From: Wallemia ichthyophaga EXF-994
Taxonomy: Eukaryota; Fungi; Basidiomycota
Assembly: GCF_000400465.1 (NCBI RefSeq)
Contig: NW_008806277.1
Coordinates: 180,001 to 212,000, forward strand
Direction of reading: 5' to 3'
Length of the DNA stretch: 32,000 nt
In this document: piece by piece, positions 10,061-30,950 of the stretch
Layout: each line of letters begins with the position of its first letter
Numbering within the stretch: the first letter of the stretch is position 1
Notes under the pieces: model-generated
Told to the model about the DNA's origin: nothing
Database searches by the model: none
What the model saw: only the letters and a program-made list of their open reading frames with translations
Position numbers and translations under genes: made by a program

Positions 10061-12413
10061 CTACTTCTTTCCTTGCCTCACTGATAACTTTATCTGATCG
10101 CCATCATCGAGATTGTAACTCGCTATAGTTTTTGAATTGGATAAAGTTATGTTTCCAAAATCTAACTTCATTCTACCAATCGGTGGCCCGCGTTTGCCCG
10201 CTCCATTCTTGTCCTCCAATGCCTCAGATATGTGCTCACGTATCACACCGCTCATTGCTGTCAGTGGAGTTGGAGATAGCTGAACAATCGATCCATCTAG
10301 TCCCCATTCTGAGTTGCTTTGATCCAGCGGAAGTTGGACTTTTAGTGTTACTTGACCTGCTGGATGATAATCCATCCACCTATGGATTGCTCATCAATAA
10401 GAGACACTAACAACAGAAAGTCAACATACTCATCCTCGGTATAATACTGTCCTTCTGGTAGCTTTTGCACTTTAGCGCGCTTAGATTTAACTGCAAATGG
10501 TTCCATTTCAGCTTCATCAGCCGTCCGCACATTGCCAGAATGTGGCATATGAAATTTGGGAACAGAAGGTCCCGATGGTGCTGCTGACATTGTTGCACCC
10601 GATGGATCGTACATGTTTCCATATGAGTTGATTTGCGGACCAGCTGTTGTGGCTTGTGGCGCTTGACTGCTGAGCTGTTAGAAATTTCAACGTTTAATCG
10701 AGACAACCCACTTTATTCCGAGCGTCTGGTTAATTCTTTCAGCTTGGACCTCTGAGTCCGCTTGCGCTTGGTAGCGTTGTGATATACTGTCAGCACTAGC
10801 CGTGTGACCATCCCAGACTCCAGCCTCTTTCCTTCTCTTGACATCTTGAGCTGCTGCTTCAGCCTCCTTCCTTCTAAGCTCGGCTTTCTCTCTATCTTGT
10901 CCGAATATATCTGTACGCCCTTGCGCAAGATTCTTGAGTGAGGAAGCAACGTCTGCACCTTGCTGCAATAGCACTGAAGCTTGACGCCTGCTTTCTGCAT
11001 ACTCCTTCTTCTCTTGCCACTTTGGATCTAAAAGCTCTATACGCAAGTGATTGGCGAATTCCTCGTTCGGCACAAGTGCACCGGAGATTGGTGAGCGTGA
11101 GAAGCCTTGCGGTATCTGTTGCTGTTGCTTTTGTGCTGAAGAAGAAGTAAGTATGTTATAATGGTGTAACAAATACACTCACACTTTGGTACATAATTGG
11201 TCTTGATCTTCATTCCCTCTGGTGCAATTGGAGCTTGAGCAGTCGGTTGTGGAGTATATTGTTGCGGTACATGTCCTTGTCCTTGCTGTGGTGCTGCTTC
11301 CATATTTACATCTTGTGTTGATGTGGATGGTTCGGTGATAATCTCTTCCTCGAGGAGGGACGTCATTCGCTTTTGTGCCATTGCAAGGTTCCTGACTTCC
11401 TTGATAGAGAGAGGAGCAGGCAATTCAAGGACGCTATCAGCTGGAGTGATCTCAATAGTCTCACAAACGACAAAGTCCTGCCAATCAATACTTTGAAATG
11501 CCGCTAAATTGAAATTAGCTCAAGTTGGGGCATATAAACGAGATAAAACCCACCTAACTCCTTTTCAGACTCCTGCTCACGCTTCTTCAAACCATCTCTC
11601 TTATAACTCTCCCATTCAGCACGTAAATTTGCGTTATCAACGAGCTGCTTCTTCTTTTCTGATAGGCTAAGCCTATCAAAGTCATCATCTAAAGGTGCAG
11701 AAGTACCCTTGATAACTTTCATGTACTGTTCAACATAATTGTTAAATAAACCGAATAGACTGTGATTTGGACGCAGGAAATCGAATTGAGGATTACGATT
11801 CTCACGACCACCAAGCATAGAAATAAAAGATTTCCCACGACGAGCAGTGAATAGTGCAGTGAGTCGTATAATATCCCTTAATGCACGTATTAGATTATGA
11901 TTTGATGGGTATCAGGCAGATGATACTCACAAATCAACAGCCAAAGCGTTGTCAGGAATATCAGCACTGAATTCATGCGCTAATGGTTCCTTTGGGATTG
12001 GCTTTGAAGGGTAAGTTGATGGCACTTGTGATATTGAAGGAGTGCTAGCTGCTGATCTACCAAAGGTATCTGAACGAATTTTAGCTCTCTGAATAGCCCT
12101 CCAGCTTCTTAGTTACCTTCTTTATCTCCTGCCTTTACTCTGTCGCACTTCCATTTGTAATAACCGTGATAAGCGTCTGCTGAGTTCAAAAATGCAAATT
12201 TCGCGTTAGATCTTTCTTTCTCTCTAATCTTCTCTTCCAAAAGAGCACCGTGTGGGGAATTTGCGACGTAATTTGCAGTTTTATCAACTATGCCTGGAGA
12301 AGGTGTGAGTGGATGGAGGTTGAGAGGCAATGAGGCGCACTTCTAATATCTGGTGGTGGATATATCATTCCCTCGGGCGGAGGAATTTTTGTAATTTGTG
12401 GATTGCCGTTCAT
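10061..12413 (-). CDS. PRP21: Splicing factor 3A subunit 1 (Prp21/SF3A1): two SURP domains and a C-terminal ubiquitin-like domain
   Basis: IYPPPDIR..IVDKTANYVA; DIIRLTALFTARRG..FDFLRPNHSLF; IDWQDFV; HLRIELLDPKWQE; GHTA; C-terminal TIASYNLDDGDQIKLSVR. Confidence 0.93.
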
Positions 12414-23900: not shown

Positions 23901-25267
23901 TTAAAGCTTATCATCTCCGAATAGTAAGCTAATAGACTCTCCATTATGTTGTCTCCTGATTGCCTCTCCAATCGTCGCGCTAACATCCATCACGTCAAGT
24001 TTTTCACCCAATTTCTCTTTATTCTCCACTTGGGGAATTGTGTTTGTCACTGCGATCTTTTTTATTGGTAGACTTGGAATTATTTCCATCGCTGATTCTG
24101 ACATTAATCCTATAAATATCATTTCCTCAGCTTGGCATTAGCTACGCATAACGTTCTTCTCACCATGTGATACTATAGCGTACACCGCAGTAGCACCCTT
24201 CTTGGCTAACTCAGTTGAAGCCAACTTCATCGTTTGGGCTGAGACTACCATATCATCAACCAACAGAGCCACCTTGCCTTGTACGTTTCCAACGACTACG
24301 TCCATATGGTCCTCCTCTTTGTCATCGCCATTACGGACTCTTGATCTATGAATCAATCCAAAGTTGACATTCAATCTGTCTGCTAACGCTGTGGCTCTGT
24401 ATTTAAATTGATATTGAGATTCCAATCCCAAAACACCAAACACACCTCTTAGCACCACCTGCATCAGGTGAAAACACCACTGCATTCTCCCAATCTGGAA
24501 CGGATGTCTTGATGTAGTTGATCATAATTGGTTCAGTGTACCTGTACGTGTATCAACTTGAACCCCACATCACAGCTATTATCACTAACAAGTTGTCAAC
24601 TGGGATATCAAAGAATCCCTGAGCAATATTAGCCAATTGAATGATAGAAGTCTTTACCCACTTGAATTTGTGATGCGTGGAGATCCAAAGTGATGACGTG
24701 ATCACATCCAGCAGTGGTGAGCATGTTAGCGACCAATTTAGCAGTCTGATTTGTTAGAAATGTGAATGCCGTAACAATTCACTCACTATTGGTGCTCTTG
24801 ATTTATCCTTTCTGTCTTGTCTAGCGTATGGATAATTTGGGATAACTGCCGTAATACGTCTAGCGGAGGCAGTTTTACAGGCTGAGATGGGAGATCAGGG
24901 CTAGCTGATGGCCTCAATGTCAACCTACCATTTGCCAATATAAGCAACTCCATTAAGCTATCGTTTATATCCCCACATCCAGATTGTATGATGAAAACGT
25001 CTTCCTCTCTAACACTCTCACCGATTCTCACGTTAATCTCTTGATTTGAGAATTTATTTACAACGCAAGGCGATAAATTCAATCCAAGTCTGCGGCTATC
25101 AGATTTTACGCTGATTGCTATTAGCTCATAGCCCACCTCTCAGAGACTTCTTTAGCCAATTCTGGGTGACTGTTGCCTGTAAATTCATCTTCTTAGATTT
25201 CTCACGCTCTATTTTCCTCTACCAGATTAATCTCACCAGTTAATATCTTGATTGTATCAGGCCTCAT
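23901..25267 (-). CDS. Ribose-phosphate pyrophosphokinase (PRS family)
   Basis: [18 protein letters not shown]; [15 protein letters not shown]; PYARQDRK; [18 protein letters not shown]; SPDAGGAKR; VDDM. The specific PRS paralog is not assignable. Confidence 0.93.
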
Positions 25268-25383
25268 TGCTTAAGATAGTGGTCGTTGTGATCAAGCGGA
25301 TGACACAGACCAAAGTAGAATACTTAGAAATTAAATTTATAAATTAAGTTATAACAATTCCTCTGCTAATTATTACTTTCTTC

Positions 25384-26244
25384 TTATTTTTTAAGCTTCT
25401 TTTTTTTCTTGTCTTCCTTAACCGGCGATTCATCGATTGACTTACGCTTTCTGTCTTTCGTGTTTTTCTTGTCTGACTTGTCCTTCTTTTCCTTCTTATC
25501 CTTATTTGGTGATGCTTGCTCGTTTACTGTGCCATCTATTCCACCGGTATCAAAACCTGGTGGTCTGAATCTCCACTTGAGCTTATCGGTTGGCTGTTCA
25601 CGCTTAATTGCACCATCTGAAGATGTGTGTTTCTCAAATTTGGGCGCTTTAAGCATTGGTATGTTGTCAGACAATTGTAATCTATGGTGGATTGGCTTAT
25701 CCACTAATTCATGTCATTATAACAGACACTATGAGCAGACAAGACACTCACCAGTAACCAGTTGACCTTGTTTATTTGGTAGCAACAACTTGAATTGATC
25801 CATTTCATCATTTATCGATGCAGATTCAAATTTGTTCCTTGATTCTTTTGAGTTTGAAGTTAACTGTGAGTGTATACTCATCTCACTGCCTTTGACATCG
25901 ATTGTACCTAATTTATTGTCTTTACTATCGAAATCCAGTTTCATTCCTTTCAAATGCTTTGTCTTTATCTATTCCTGCGTGAGTCTTAACACGGAATAGC
26001 GATAAAACGCACATTCTCTGGTACTCTTAAGCATACGATTTCATAATCATCATCTTTAGCCAGCTTTAACCAATCAACGCTGCTAGATTGATCGACTCCT
26101 TTCAATTTGAAGCCTTTTGGTGGTTTGTATCTACTTGCATTAGAATACAATGACTGTTTGTCGAAATATAACTAACTCATTTAATTGCCTGCTCGTTTCC
26201 TCCTCTCCGACACTCTCACTTGGGCTTCTCTCTGGAGAAGACAT
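25384..26244 (-). CDS. RPA34: RNA polymerase I subunit A34.5
   Basis: YKPPKGFKL..EIVCLRVPEN..KHLKGMKL; QPTDKLKWRFRPPGF; Lys-rich C-terminal tail. Confidence 0.8.
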
Positions 26245-27217: not shown

Positions 27218-28033
27218 TTTAAACGCAAAAGTTCTGTAACCGTGGTAATCTTGTTGAAAAGAGCGTCTTCGTTGCTTAAATTGTGGTAGGTCCGTGCCAA
27301 GTGTAAGCCCGTGCAGTTAGGTACGCAGGACAAAAAAGCTATCGCATTATACAGTCTCTTTTATCTTTTGTAATACAATTTGCTTCTTTTCTGGCTTGCC
27401 ATCAAGATATTTTGCGCGCGGCCCTGCCAAAGCATGATAAGCCTGAGACATGTTGAGGGTACTTGACAATCACGACGGTTGCAAGCGAATTTTGCAAGGC
27501 TTCATCTAAGTCAATTATGCAGAATGGATTGGCGGAACCATTGAATAGTAAGACTTCCAAGGGGTATAAGCTCCTTAGAGACGGATATCTGTGGCGAGTG
27601 AAAGTAAGTGTCGAGCAGTTCTATTGTGGGCTACCGTCATCGCAAAGGCGCCTCCAGCAGATAAATACGTTGCGCATCTGTTACGCATGGATACCGACAT
27701 TCGTGCTTGTGGTAACACATGCATGGCAAGCTTATACACGCTGAAATAGAGCTAGATCTTTTCAGGTGACTCTGAAAGCCGCAAAACTCCTTCAAGCGCG
27801 AAAATGAGGACGATCTATCTGCCGTCTCGAAACAAAAGAAAGTCACGCTTCGAGACAAGTGTTTATAGCACAGTCTTATGTAAGCACATACTCTAAAGCA
27901 TGTAATGACAGACCTAAGCCTGATCAGAACGACTTCTTGGTCTATTTAGATGGGATGCCTGTGTCAGTCTCTCAAAAACAAATATGTTCACAGCGTCATC
28001 GTCATGAATGTTTAAGCTAATCTGAATATGTAT

Positions 28034-29228: not shown

Positions 29229-30197
29229 TTTAAACGCCAAACTTTTGTATCGGTGGTAGTCCTGTCGCAAGGAATGTCTTCGTTCGTTAGTAATTCCTGA
29301 AAAGGCCAGTGCGTGGGGTAGACCTTCACTTAGGTACGCAATGTAAAAGACGTTGCCACATTCGTGCAGTCTCTTCCTTTCTATTGCGATGCAGCTTGCA
29401 TCTCTTCTAGCCTGTTATTAAAATTTTCTGTGCACGTCCCTAGAAAAGAATGATAGGCCGCCTCTAAAACAAATTGAGTAACTAAGGTGGCAATCGCTTA
29501 AGCAGCCTGCAGGTCGATATAGCTTGCTTCGATCTGAGTCAACTATGTTGAGTCGATTGTCGAGCCTCAGAGTTGGTGATCATTATTGCTTCCGAAGGAT
29601 AAAAGCTGCTCAGTATTCTGTGGCAAGTATATTCGCCGTCAAGCTGTTGTCTGGGGCACTGTTCTCATCGCACACGAACCTCCAGCAGATGAGTAAATTA
29701 CCATGAATACAGACTTTCGTGCTTATAATGGAGATATTGCACATGCATGGCAGACTTGTATAGACTAAAATAGTGCTGGATCTTTCAAGTGACTCTAAAG
29801 CCGCATTCCCCTTTAAGCACGAAAATGAGGGCGATTCGTCTGCCATCCCAAATCGAAGCAAGGTTACGTTACCATTCGAGACAAGTATTTATAGCACAGT
29901 CTTAGATTAGCACGTCGTCTAAATCAGTCTGCTGTATTCACTGATGCGTTGTTAAACCGACTGACTAGCATCGGTACTGGATCTTGCTTCATAATCGCAG
30001 ATTTGCTCTCTCAACAAATTGAAAGGTTGATCGTTTGTTGCAATGGCAAAACTTAGCCAAGGCAGAAGAAGGTCTCATTCTACATAAATTGTTGTATGCC
30101 TGTGTCATAGAGTCTCTCAAAAGCAAATATGTTCACAGCGTCGTCGTCATAAATGTTTAGGTGAATCTGCATATGTAAATCATGTACATAAAATAGT

Positions 30198-30950
30198 TTA
30201 CTCGGCCTTTGGAGCTGGCAATGGGGCTTGTGCCTTCTTGCCACGGACCTTCTTGGCTGGAGCATCCTTCTTTTGGCCTTTAGAAGCGTAAATGGCTGAA
30301 ACCTTAGCAACAGCTGGCTGAAATTGCAAGTTAATACGCAATATAGGAGTCTCAATCGAGAGTATAAACTGAGGTTTAGTTTTATCAATGTCATTCGCTT
30401 GAATGGCCAGAGAGGTACGATGAAGTCTTGAAGACAACACCAATCTGGTAAAGTGATGCGAATATTTTAATATAGCAACACAAATACGCCTGACCTTTCA
30501 AAAAGTATTTCGAGGGGGTTCTAGCGTGTTGCGATCGCAGTTTATACTCTCGATTGGATTGAGGTTTATCACTCACCTTGACAAGATCTGGGCGAGTAGT
30601 AGCAACAACATTGGCAGTTGACTTGTAAGCACGACGCTTTCCTCCAGTGACTTGGGTCTTAGCGAAGCCCTTGTTCCATTGGTTGACTGGGGCCTTGGTC
30701 TTACGAGCAACGATTACAGCACCCTTGTCGTGTGGGTTGACACCAAGAGCCTTTTGACCATTGATGGTTGAAGAGTACTTGTAAGAGTGGTTTGCGAGCA
30801 AGTTACCAGGCTCAGAAGACAACTTGTGGGAACCTGGTGCACTTGGGCGAATGAAAGAGGAAGATTTACGCAACAAGAGCCATTGGAGATCACCTGACAC
30901 TGGAGAATCGTTGTTAATACGTTAAAGCACATTAAATTCTAATTCTAACT
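30198..30950 (-). CDS. RPL28: 60S ribosomal protein eL28
   Basis: MSGDLQWLLLRKSSSFI...SEPGNLLANHSYKYS...RPDLVK|PAVAKVSAIYASK. Intron 1 (30949-30900) splits the ATG. Intron 2 is 30576-30318. Confidence 0.93.
30353..30556. repeat. Perfect 19-bp inverted repeat, arms 30353-30371 and 30538-30556
   Basis: CAATCGAGAGTATAAACTG and CAGTTTATACTCTCGATTG are exact reverse complements. Confidence 0.95.
30386..30533 (-). ncRNA. Intronic box H/ACA snoRNA (predicted) in RPL28 intron 2
   Basis: Hairpin 1 has a GCAACAC/GTGTTGC basal stem. H box ATATTA (ANANNA) at 30473-30468. Hairpin 2 has ATTCGC/GCGAAT and CCAGA/TCTGG stems around a pocket. ACA lies at 30391-30389, with the 3' end inferred 3 nt later. Confidence 0.75.

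What the first reader, a model, noticed from the sequence alone, without database searches (positions are those of the whole stretch)
30318..30576. Perfect 19-bp clamp shrinks a 259-nt intron to the genome's normal size
Seen: RPL28 intron 2 is 259 nt, while nearly all other introns here are about 45-60 nt. It carries an exact 19-bp inverted repeat. Only 20 nt at the donor side and 35 nt at the branch/acceptor side lie outside the stem, 55 nt in total. Inference: the stem loops out the snoRNA so a short-intron spliceosome sees a normal span. It may also be an RNase III (Rnt1/Pac1-type) substrate for snoRNA release; flanking-stem processing of snoRNAs is established in yeasts. This could be a general way to carry snoRNAs in a compact genome.
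Basis: partly seen in the sequence, partly recalled or inferred. Interest (0 to 1): 0.72.

Follow-up and report, generated by a model that had tools for sequence, protein, structure and literature searches.

The report
Conserved RNA clamp around an intronic snoRNA
In the salt-loving fungus Wallemia, an oversized ribosomal-protein intron carries a small nucleolar RNA inside a long RNA helix that has stayed paired while its sequence changed, leaving about 50-60 unpaired bases, the normal intron size there, though its function is untested.

Summary
The window is Wallemia ichthyophaga EXF-994. Intron 2 of the eL28 gene (minus strand, 30318-30576, 259 nt) carries a perfect 19-bp inverted repeat with 20 nt outside it on the donor side and 35 nt on the acceptor side.

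The helix encloses a box H/ACA snoRNA that matches no Rfam family. It is the strongest inverted repeat in the 32-kb window and has no other copy there.

Four other Wallemia-clade sequences keep a helix at the same place. Seven of 19 pairs show compensatory double changes, and one relative uses entirely different arm sequences. Stem-excluded length is 49-60 nt in the four complete introns, against mean introns of 55-61 nt.

Three Agaricomycetes host the homologous snoRNA in the orthologous intron (334-421 nt) without a significant clamp. Coprinopsis has 55-67 nt sibling introns in the same gene. So a clamp is not a general need of short-intron fungi.

The helix has no AGNN tetraloop, so it is not an Rnt1-type substrate.

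Best reading: a selected zipper or external stem that loops the snoRNA out of the intron. A splicing role is inferred, not shown. RNase III entry or snoRNP insulation remain live rivals. Whether other Wallemia introns do this could not be tested.

The parts
30318..30576 (-). eL28 intron 2, 259 nt, GTGAGT...CAG, which hosts the snoRNA and the clamp
   Evidence: The spliced protein matches eL28 orthologues.
30538..30556 (-). 5' arm of the clamp (RNA: CAAUCGAGAGUAUAAACUG), intron positions 21-39
   Evidence: Mean pairing probability 0.98 and arm duplex -27.9 kcal/mol.
30353..30371 (-). 3' arm of the clamp (RNA: CAGUUUAUACUCUCGAUUG), intron positions 206-224
   Evidence: Compensatory changes in relatives.
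30386..30535 (-). Box H/ACA snoRNA of about 147-150 nt. The mature ends are not mapped.
   Evidence: Consensus fold of 5 Wallemia-clade sequences gives hairpin, hinge, hairpin and tail, with 8 pairs carrying compensatory changes. No Rfam family matches.
30468..30473 (-). H box AUAUUA in the hinge between the two hairpins
   Evidence: The ANANNA pattern is kept at the aligned position in 7 of 8 species read.
30389..30391 (-). ACA box, followed by 3 nt (UUG) at the presumed 3' end of the snoRNA
30330..30336 (-). Branch-site motif UAUUAAC, read by motif only. The branch A is 14 nt from the 3' splice site and 21 nt lie between the clamp and the branch A.
   Evidence: The same motif occurs in intron 1.
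30577..30899 (-). eL28 exon 2
30198..30317 (-). eL28 exon 3, including the stop codon
30900..30949 (-). eL28 intron 1, 50 nt (GTTAGA...CAG). It splits the start codon A|TG and serves as the normal-size comparison intron in the same gene.
   Evidence: The W. mellicola protein model starts MSGDLQW.

Best explanation
The helix is a selected RNA structure in the eL28 pre-mRNA of the Wallemia lineage. Two intron segments on either side of an intron-hosted box H/ACA snoRNA pair to form a 18-27 bp clamp.

The clamp turns the snoRNA (about 150 nt) into a side domain. The path from the 5' splice site to the branch site becomes about 35-41 nt of single strand plus one helix end. The unpaired intron is 49-60 nt, the size this organism's spliceosome normally handles.

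This is how S. cerevisiae 'zipper stems' and the 'external stems' of yeast snoRNA introns are thought to act. The helix brings the splice signals together and keeps the bulky, co-transcriptionally assembled snoRNP from disturbing them. After splicing, the snoRNA would be freed from the lariat by debranching and exonuclease trimming.

Shown: the helix exists, is far beyond chance, is conserved by compensatory change, and sits at near-constant distances from the splice signals.

Inferred: that its selected function is efficient splicing of the host intron.
For: - Helix beyond chance.
- Conservation with covariation: a helix at the same place in W. ichthyophaga (2 strains), a Wallemia sp. from SRR25399871, W. 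mellicola and two metagenome relatives. Of 19 pairs, 7 have double compensatory changes and 95.8% of cells are paired. No shuffle of 500 reaches this, and slid controls pair only 24-40%.
- Relative L003 uses completely different arm sequences (11+7 bp, pair probabilities 0.61-1.0, all but the innermost at least 0.93).
- Flank duplex z-scores are -5.5 to -9.1 in all Wallemia-clade sequences.
- Geometry: 5' splice site to stem is 20, 18, 13 and 16 nt. Stem to 3' splice site is 35, 31, 40 and 44 nt. Sums are 55, 49, 53 and 60 nt. Stem to branch A is 21, 17, 26 and 24 nt.
- Normal introns average 61 and 55 nt in the two published genomes. They are 41-84 nt among about 19 hand-picked candidates from the window heuristic, and 50 nt for intron 1 of the same gene.
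- From my own knowledge, with only the reference confirmed: Vincenti et al. 2007 (RNA 13:138) reported that stable external stems in yeast snoRNA introns can overcome bad snoRNA positioning, and that positioning affects host splicing.
Against: - No experimental or RNA-seq evidence was available.
- Three Agaricomycetes with similarly short normal introns splice 334-421 nt versions of this intron with the homologous snoRNA and no significant clamp. A clamp is therefore not required in principle.
- The helices (18-27 bp, -22 to -34 kcal/mol) are much longer than the 6-bp minimum used to define a yeast zipper stem. This hints that something else, such as a dsRNA-binding enzyme, may be reading them.
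- The near-constant outside length may simply reflect flanks trimmed to the steric minimum in a compact genome.
- The total linker of 35-41 nt is slightly below the 42-nt yeast minimum.
- One natural strain tolerates a mismatch in the helix.
- Only one intron was examined.
Confidence: 0.45

Rival explanations
1. The helix is a processing signal. It is a double-stranded entry site for an RNase III-family enzyme (Pac1/Rnt1 homologue or Dicer-like). The enzyme cuts on both sides of the snoRNA, in the pre-mRNA or the excised lariat, and exonucleases then trim to the snoRNP. This could coexist with a splicing role.
For: - The helices are long and nearly perfect (19, 21, 22 and 27 bp). This is about two helical turns, more than a zipper needs.
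- They begin only 3-7 nt from the 5' hairpin and 10-20 nt from the ACA tail.
- RNase III release of intronic and polycistronic snoRNAs is established in S. cerevisiae (PMC10557570).
- From my own knowledge: the U18 host intron is cut by Rnt1p in a flank-formed helix without a canonical tetraloop, helped by a snoRNP protein (Giorgi et al. 2001).
Against: - There is no AGNN tetraloop. The helix is closed by a 166-nt domain.
- In relative L003 the helix is broken into 11+7 bp, a poor RNase III substrate.
- Cleavage before splicing would destroy the mRNA of a highly expressed ribosomal protein.
- Agaricomycetes make the homologous snoRNA without such a helix.
- No cleavage data exist.
Confidence: 0.25
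2. The helix serves the snoRNA only. It acts as an external stem that insulates folding of the two H/ACA hairpins from the very short flanks, or stalls exonucleases until the snoRNP is assembled. It has no effect on host splicing.
For: - Wallemia flanks are short (40-45 nt 5', 68-80 nt 3') compared with 75-146 and 81-107 nt in Agaricomycetes. The clamp appears together with compaction.
- External stems in flanking intron sequence are known to aid assembly of box C/D snoRNPs that lack a terminal stem (PMC10557570).
Against: - H/ACA snoRNAs need no juxtaposition of their ends, and no such requirement is known for them.
Confidence: 0.2
3. The helix is an autoregulatory element of the ribosomal protein gene. 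It would be a helix bound by eL28, or another sensor, that controls splicing, as in several yeast ribosomal protein introns.
For: - The host is a ribosomal protein gene.
- Structured introns autoregulate RPL7B, RPL18B, RPS22B and others in yeast (abstracts listed).
- An 8-bp core (GAGAGUAU/AUACUCUC) is invariant in four species.
Against: Relative L003 has an unrelated helix sequence at the same place. The constraint is therefore on pairing, not on a protein-recognition sequence. No similarity to an eL28 rRNA binding site was tested.
Confidence: 0.05
4. The repeat is a DNA-level relic without RNA function: terminal inverted repeats of a small transposon (MITE) or a palindromic insertion that brought the snoRNA in.
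For: A perfect 19-bp terminal inverted repeat around about 166 bp looks like a MITE at first sight.
Against: - There is no other copy in the window or in neighbouring loci, and no target-site duplication.
- The snoRNA predates the repeat, since it is present in the orthologous Agaricomycete intron without arms.
- The arms evolve by compensatory substitutions.
Confidence: 0.02

Closest known systems
Zipper stems of S. cerevisiae introns (RPS17B; Goguel & Rosbash 1993; Rogic et al. 2008; in vivo survey PMC12350175)
   Same: [quoted passage not shown]
   Different: - It loops out a functional snoRNA. snoRNA introns were excluded from the yeast survey.
- It is much longer (18-27 bp against a 6-bp minimum).
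- It lies in a genome whose normal introns are about 50 nt, rather than in a long-intron class.
- It shows clear covariation, which the yeast survey found hard to detect.
- The total linker of 35-41 nt is below the yeast 42-85 nt window.
External stems flanking intronic snoRNAs (Darzacq & Kiss 2000 for box C/D; Vincenti et al. 2007 for yeast U18/U24 introns; cited from my own knowledge, reference seen; summarised in PMC10557570)
   Same: Intron sequences on both sides of the snoRNA pair with each other. In yeast such stems were reported to compensate for bad spacing between snoRNA and branch point and to matter for host splicing.
   Different: The known cases concern box C/D snoRNAs, where the stem juxtaposes boxes C and D. 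Here the guest is box H/ACA, for which no such need is known. The stem is also far longer.
RNase III (Rnt1p) release of intronic and polycistronic snoRNAs in S. cerevisiae (Ghazal et al. 2005; Giorgi et al. 2001; PMC10557570)
   Same: A double-stranded region next to the snoRNA that could give endonucleolytic entry independent of debranching.
   Different: There is no AGNN tetraloop-capped stem-loop. The helix encloses the whole snoRNA, and no cleavage evidence exists.

Membership tests
Zipper stem (S. cerevisiae operational definition, PMC12350175) | [quoted passage not shown] | tested here: met
   18-27 bp helices with pairing probability 0.82-0.98.
Zipper stem (S. cerevisiae operational definition, PMC12350175) | [quoted passage not shown] | tested here: met
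   The 5' distances are 20, 18, 13 and 16 nt. The branch distances are 21, 17, 26 and 24 nt, so one of the four is slightly under 20.
Zipper stem (S. cerevisiae operational definition, PMC12350175) | Total linker (5' splice site to stem plus stem to branch point) of 42-85 nt | tested here: inconclusive
   Observed 41, 35, 39 and 40 nt, just under the yeast minimum. That minimum comes from a yeast A-complex model, while Wallemia routinely splices 41-50 nt introns.
Zipper stem (S. cerevisiae operational definition, PMC12350175) | Promotes splicing of its intron | not testable with these tools
   Needs reporter mutagenesis or RNA-seq.
External stem of intronic box C/D snoRNAs | Flanking intron sequences pair around the snoRNA | tested here: met
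External stem of intronic box C/D snoRNAs | The enclosed RNA is box C/D (RUGAUGA and CUGA brought together by the stem) | tested here: not met
   There are no C or D boxes on the sense strand. The architecture is H/ACA.
Rnt1p (yeast RNase III) substrate | Stem capped by an AGNN (or AAGU) tetraloop, with cleavage 14-16 bp away | tested here: not met
   The helix is closed by a 166-nt two-hairpin domain, and the flanks contain no separate capped hairpin. The requirement is as stated in PMC10557570.
Generic RNase III / Pac1-type dsRNA substrate | About two turns (at least 20 bp) of near-perfect dsRNA | tested here: inconclusive
   19, 21, 22 and 27 bp in four sequences, but 11+7 bp with an internal loop in L003. 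The threshold is from my general knowledge.
Box H/ACA snoRNA | Hairpin, hinge, hairpin and tail, supported by covariation | tested here: met
   RNAalifold consensus gives 37 pairs, 8 of them with compensatory changes.
Box H/ACA snoRNA | H box ANANNA in the hinge and ACA 3 nt from the 3' end | tested here: met
   AUAUUA at 30468-30473 and ACA at 30389-30391. The H box is kept in 7 of 8 species, and L002 has AAAUUG. The mature 3' end is not mapped.
Box H/ACA snoRNA | Pseudouridylation pocket complementary to an rRNA or snRNA target 14-16 nt upstream of the H or ACA box | not tested
   No Wallemia rRNA was available. From memory only, the conserved 5' pocket strand GCUAGA could pair with a CUAGC segment of 25S rRNA.
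Any curated Rfam snoRNA family | Covariance-model match | tested here: not met
   No match at E up to 10 in the window region or at the snoRNA in the orthologues.
MITE / terminal-inverted-repeat transposon | Multiple dispersed copies and target-site duplication | tested here: not met
   A single copy in the window and neighbouring loci and no duplication at the arm ends.

The most novel reading that the evidence does not exclude
In the Wallemia lineage, every intron that must exceed the normal 45-60 nt is brought back to a normal effective length by a long clamp helix. This would apply to all snoRNA-bearing introns. It would mean that this compact-genome spliceosome reads effective rather than linear intron length, and that the same helices double as RNase III entry sites for snoRNA release. 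It would be a lineage-specific solution that arose as intron flanks were trimmed.
Probability: 0.2. Interest if true: 0.7.

Novelty: new variant of a known kind. Interest (0 to 1): 0.5.

Why it matters
Helices that bring splice signals together are well described in budding yeast. There they are hard to support by covariation, and snoRNA-bearing introns were set aside in the main survey.

This is a clean, covariation-supported case in a different setting. The genome has about 50-nt introns, the helix encloses a box H/ACA snoRNA (a class with no known need for an external stem), and the leftover intron length matches the genome norm in four species.

The sister lineage (Agaricomycetes) keeps the same snoRNA in the same intron without the helix. 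That gives a natural gain-of-structure contrast.

If the pattern holds genome-wide, it would give a direct handle on how intron-definition spliceosomes measure length and on how compact genomes keep intronic snoRNAs.

If it is a one-off, it is a well-documented but ordinary example of an external or zipper stem.

Tried and rejected
- Rfam at gathering and permissive thresholds, on the window and on the orthologues, gave no family for the snoRNA.
- A metagenome scan with a 14-base conserved snoRNA pattern returned 120 loci.
- A plasmid BLAST of the intron found nothing and was not informative.
- The search for other clamped introns or snoRNAs failed. Inverted-repeat scans of the window and of about 23 kb of further Wallemia DNA found no second case.
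- A box C/D motif scan gave only a false positive inside a coding exon of a SURP-domain gene.
- An apparent 225-nt intron with an inverted repeat at 25460-25751 turned out to be a normal 47-nt intron followed by lysine-rich coding sequence.
- The inverted repeats at 27555-27746 and 29523-29862 lie in paralogous upstream regions of two Kre9-like genes, not in introns.
- MITE origin was rejected.
- Vincenti et al. 2007 could not be read because it is not held.
- I ran no further search on guessing other snoRNA host genes.
- The snoRNA target was not assigned because no Wallemia rRNA was available.

Full report
**What is in the sequence**

The window is from Wallemia ichthyophaga EXF-994, a halophilic basidiomycete with a compact 9.6-Mb genome. 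The spliced protein is 99% identical to that strain's eL28 and matches Pfam Ribosomal_L28e.

The gene lies on the minus strand.
- Exon 1 ends with the A of the start codon.
- Intron 1 is 50 nt (30900-30949).
- Exon 2 is 30577-30899.
- Intron 2 is 30318-30576 (259 nt, GTGAGT...CAG).
- Exon 3 is 30198-30317.

The exon 2/3 junction (RPDLVK|PAVAKVS) agrees with annotated orthologues.

The inverted repeat is exactly as described. The arms are 30353-30371 and 30538-30556, 19 nt, perfectly complementary, with 166 nt between them. There are 20 nt on the donor side and 35 nt on the acceptor side.

**Is it more than chance?**

- It is the best inverted repeat in the whole 32-kb window.
- The 19-mer with up to three mismatches occurs only at these two sites, against 0.01 expected.
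- The intron folds at -73.2 kcal/mol, z = -6.2 against dinucleotide shuffles, with the clamp in the minimum-energy and centroid structures.
- The arm duplex is -27.9 kcal/mol and its pairs have a mean probability of 0.98.

**What the clamp encloses**

Between the arms lies a box H/ACA snoRNA of about 150 nt.
- The 5' hairpin has the lower stem GCAACAC/GUGUUGC.
- The hinge carries the H box AUAUUA (30468-30473).
- The 3' hairpin has the lower stem UUCGC/GCGAA.
- An ACA (30389-30391) is followed by three bases.

A consensus fold of five Wallemia-clade sequences gives this architecture, with 8 of 37 pairs carrying compensatory changes. No Rfam family matches, even at E = 10. I did not assign its target.

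**Relatives**

Through eL28 orthologues I fetched the same intron from several sources.
- A second W. ichthyophaga strain (L007).
- A Wallemia species assembled from SRR25399871 (L002).
- W. mellicola CBS 633.66 (L001).
- Two metagenome relatives: L003, and L004/L005, which is cut off inside the 3' arm.

All carry the snoRNA, and all carry a helix formed by the two flanks. Flank-to-flank duplex z-scores are -5.5 to -9.1, with 0 of 500 shuffles as good.

I registered the helices on the invariant core GAGAGUAU/AUACUCUC. The five alignable sequences are 95.8% paired. Seven of 19 pairs have changes on both sides that keep the pair. No shuffle reaches this, and sliding the partner by 1-3 columns drops pairing to 24-40% with essentially no double changes.

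W. mellicola extends the helix outward by nine further pairs that are mismatched in W. ichthyophaga. L003 has an 11+7 bp helix of unrelated sequence at the same place (pair probabilities 0.61-1.0, all but the innermost at least 0.93).

The second W. ichthyophaga strain has a G-to-A change that makes one C.A mismatch. The 'perfect' 19 bp is therefore not invariant even within the species.

Selection is on pairing, not on sequence. This rules out a transposon relic. So do the lack of other copies and the fact that the snoRNA is older than the arms (see the outgroup section).

**Geometry**

For the four complete introns:

| Measure | W. ichthyophaga | Wallemia sp. (L002) | W. mellicola (L001) | L003 |
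|---|---|---|---|---|
| Total length (nt) | 259 | 269 | 274 | 281 |
| 5' splice site to helix (nt) | 20 | 18 | 13 | 16 |
| Helix to 3' splice site (nt) | 35 | 31 | 40 | 44 |
| Stem-excluded length (nt) | 55 | 49 | 53 | 60 |
| Helix to branch A (nt) | 21 | 17 | 26 | 24 |

Branch sites are read by motif only.

Normal introns in these genomes average 61 nt (W. ichthyophaga) and 55 nt (W. sebi) (PMC3849046). A crude ORF-bridging scan of the window returned 224 candidates. About 19 that I picked by hand are 41-84 nt, median about 49. Intron 1 of the same gene is 50 nt.

The helix ends also sit close to the nearest positions allowed in a model of the yeast A complex. [quoted passage not shown]

**The outgroup test cuts the other way**

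In Coprinopsis cinerea, Laccaria bicolor and Gelatoporia subvermispora, the orthologous eL28 intron also hosts a snoRNA with a clearly homologous 5' hairpin.

These introns are 334, 354 and 421 nt, with flanks of 75-146 and 81-107 nt. They have no significant flank helix: z = -0.2, -2.4 and +0.6.

The other three introns of the Coprinopsis gene are 55, 64 and 67 nt. A fungus with short normal introns can therefore splice this snoRNA intron without a clamp.

The clamp is a Wallemia-lineage gain. It goes together with much shorter flanks (40-45 and 68-80 nt).

**How it most likely works**

The best-supported reading is that the helix acts like the zipper stems of budding-yeast introns and the external stems of yeast snoRNA introns.
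- It makes the snoRNA a side domain.
- It keeps the co-transcriptionally assembled snoRNP away from the splice signals.

This may compensate for the trimming of the spacers in this compact genome.

The existence, selection and placement of the helix are shown. The effect on splicing is inferred. I put this at about 0.45.

**Rivals**

*RNase III entry site, about 0.25.* The helices are about two turns long and nearly perfect, more than a zipper needs, and RNase III release of snoRNAs is established in yeast (PMC10557570). But there is no AGNN tetraloop, so it is not an Rnt1-type substrate. L003's helix is interrupted, and cutting before splicing would cost the host mRNA.

*snoRNA-only role, about 0.2.* This would be folding insulation or an exonuclease stop. 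It does not explain the constant, near-minimal distances to the splice signals.

*Autoregulation by eL28, about 0.05.* This is unlikely given L003's unrelated helix sequence.

*DNA relic, about 0.02.* This is effectively excluded.

The splicing and RNase III readings are not mutually exclusive.

**What I could not do**

The key question for interest is whether other long or snoRNA-bearing introns in Wallemia have such clamps. It could not be tested.

None occurs in the window or in about 23 kb of further Wallemia DNA. The tools give no way to scan a fungal genome. No expression data were available. A literature search found no description of this in Wallemia or other basidiomycetes.

**Verdict**

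It is a new variant of a known kind: a zipper or external stem, here around an H/ACA snoRNA in a short-intron genome, with unusually clear covariation and a natural clamp-less outgroup.

Interest is moderate (0.5). It would be higher if the pattern proves genome-wide.

Noticed in passing
window 30900-30950 (minus strand); proteins P0001, P0002: Intron 1 of eL28 (50 nt) splits the start codon as A|TG, giving MSGDLQW..., as in the W. mellicola model. The public EXF-994 model instead takes a distant upstream exon (N-terminus MVISALLHL, gene span 1545 nt). The model from another strain reads into the snoRNA intron. Both look like annotation errors.
   Followed up: partly
window 27400-27900 and 29230-30000 (minus strand): The upstream regions of two tandem Kre9/KNH-like genes are paralogous. 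Both keep a TATA-like motif and nested inverted repeats (29523-29536/29849-29862, 29715-29732/29807-29824, 27555-27572/27729-27746). This could be a structured 5' leader or an unannotated RNA. Rfam finds nothing there.
   Followed up: no
window 30560-30568 and 30370-30378 (minus strand): A 9-nt direct repeat, TAAACCTCA, occurs just after the 5' splice site and again overlapping the start of the 3' arm. It is present only in W. ichthyophaga, not in the relatives. It may be chance or a small duplication.
   Followed up: partly
window 24138-26244 (minus strand): The public gene model fuses an RNA polymerase I A34-like protein with a PRPP synthetase. The A34-like reading frame ends with a stop at about 25384 after a normal 47-nt intron, so these are probably two genes.
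   Followed up: partly
L006 2094-2271, L129, L130 compared with window 30386-30535: The snoRNA's 5' hairpin is conserved between Wallemia and Agaricomycetes, but the 3' hairpin is not alignable and is larger in Agaricomycetes. This suggests turnover of the second guide. The Wallemia sp. in L002 has a variant H box (AAAUUG).
   Followed up: no
window 30318-30576 and orthologous introns: Duplex prediction extends pairing beyond the clamp, so that the 5' splice-site bases (GUGAGU...) pair with the branch-site region in several species. This may be trivial complementarity or a further layer of structure.
   Followed up: no
window about 10650-12330 (minus strand): A SURP-domain protein, which looks like an SF3a subunit 1 / Prp21-like splicing factor on reading the translation (no family search was run), is encoded here. 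A box C/D-like motif pair at 11565-11688 lies inside its coding exon and is a false positive.
   Followed up: partly
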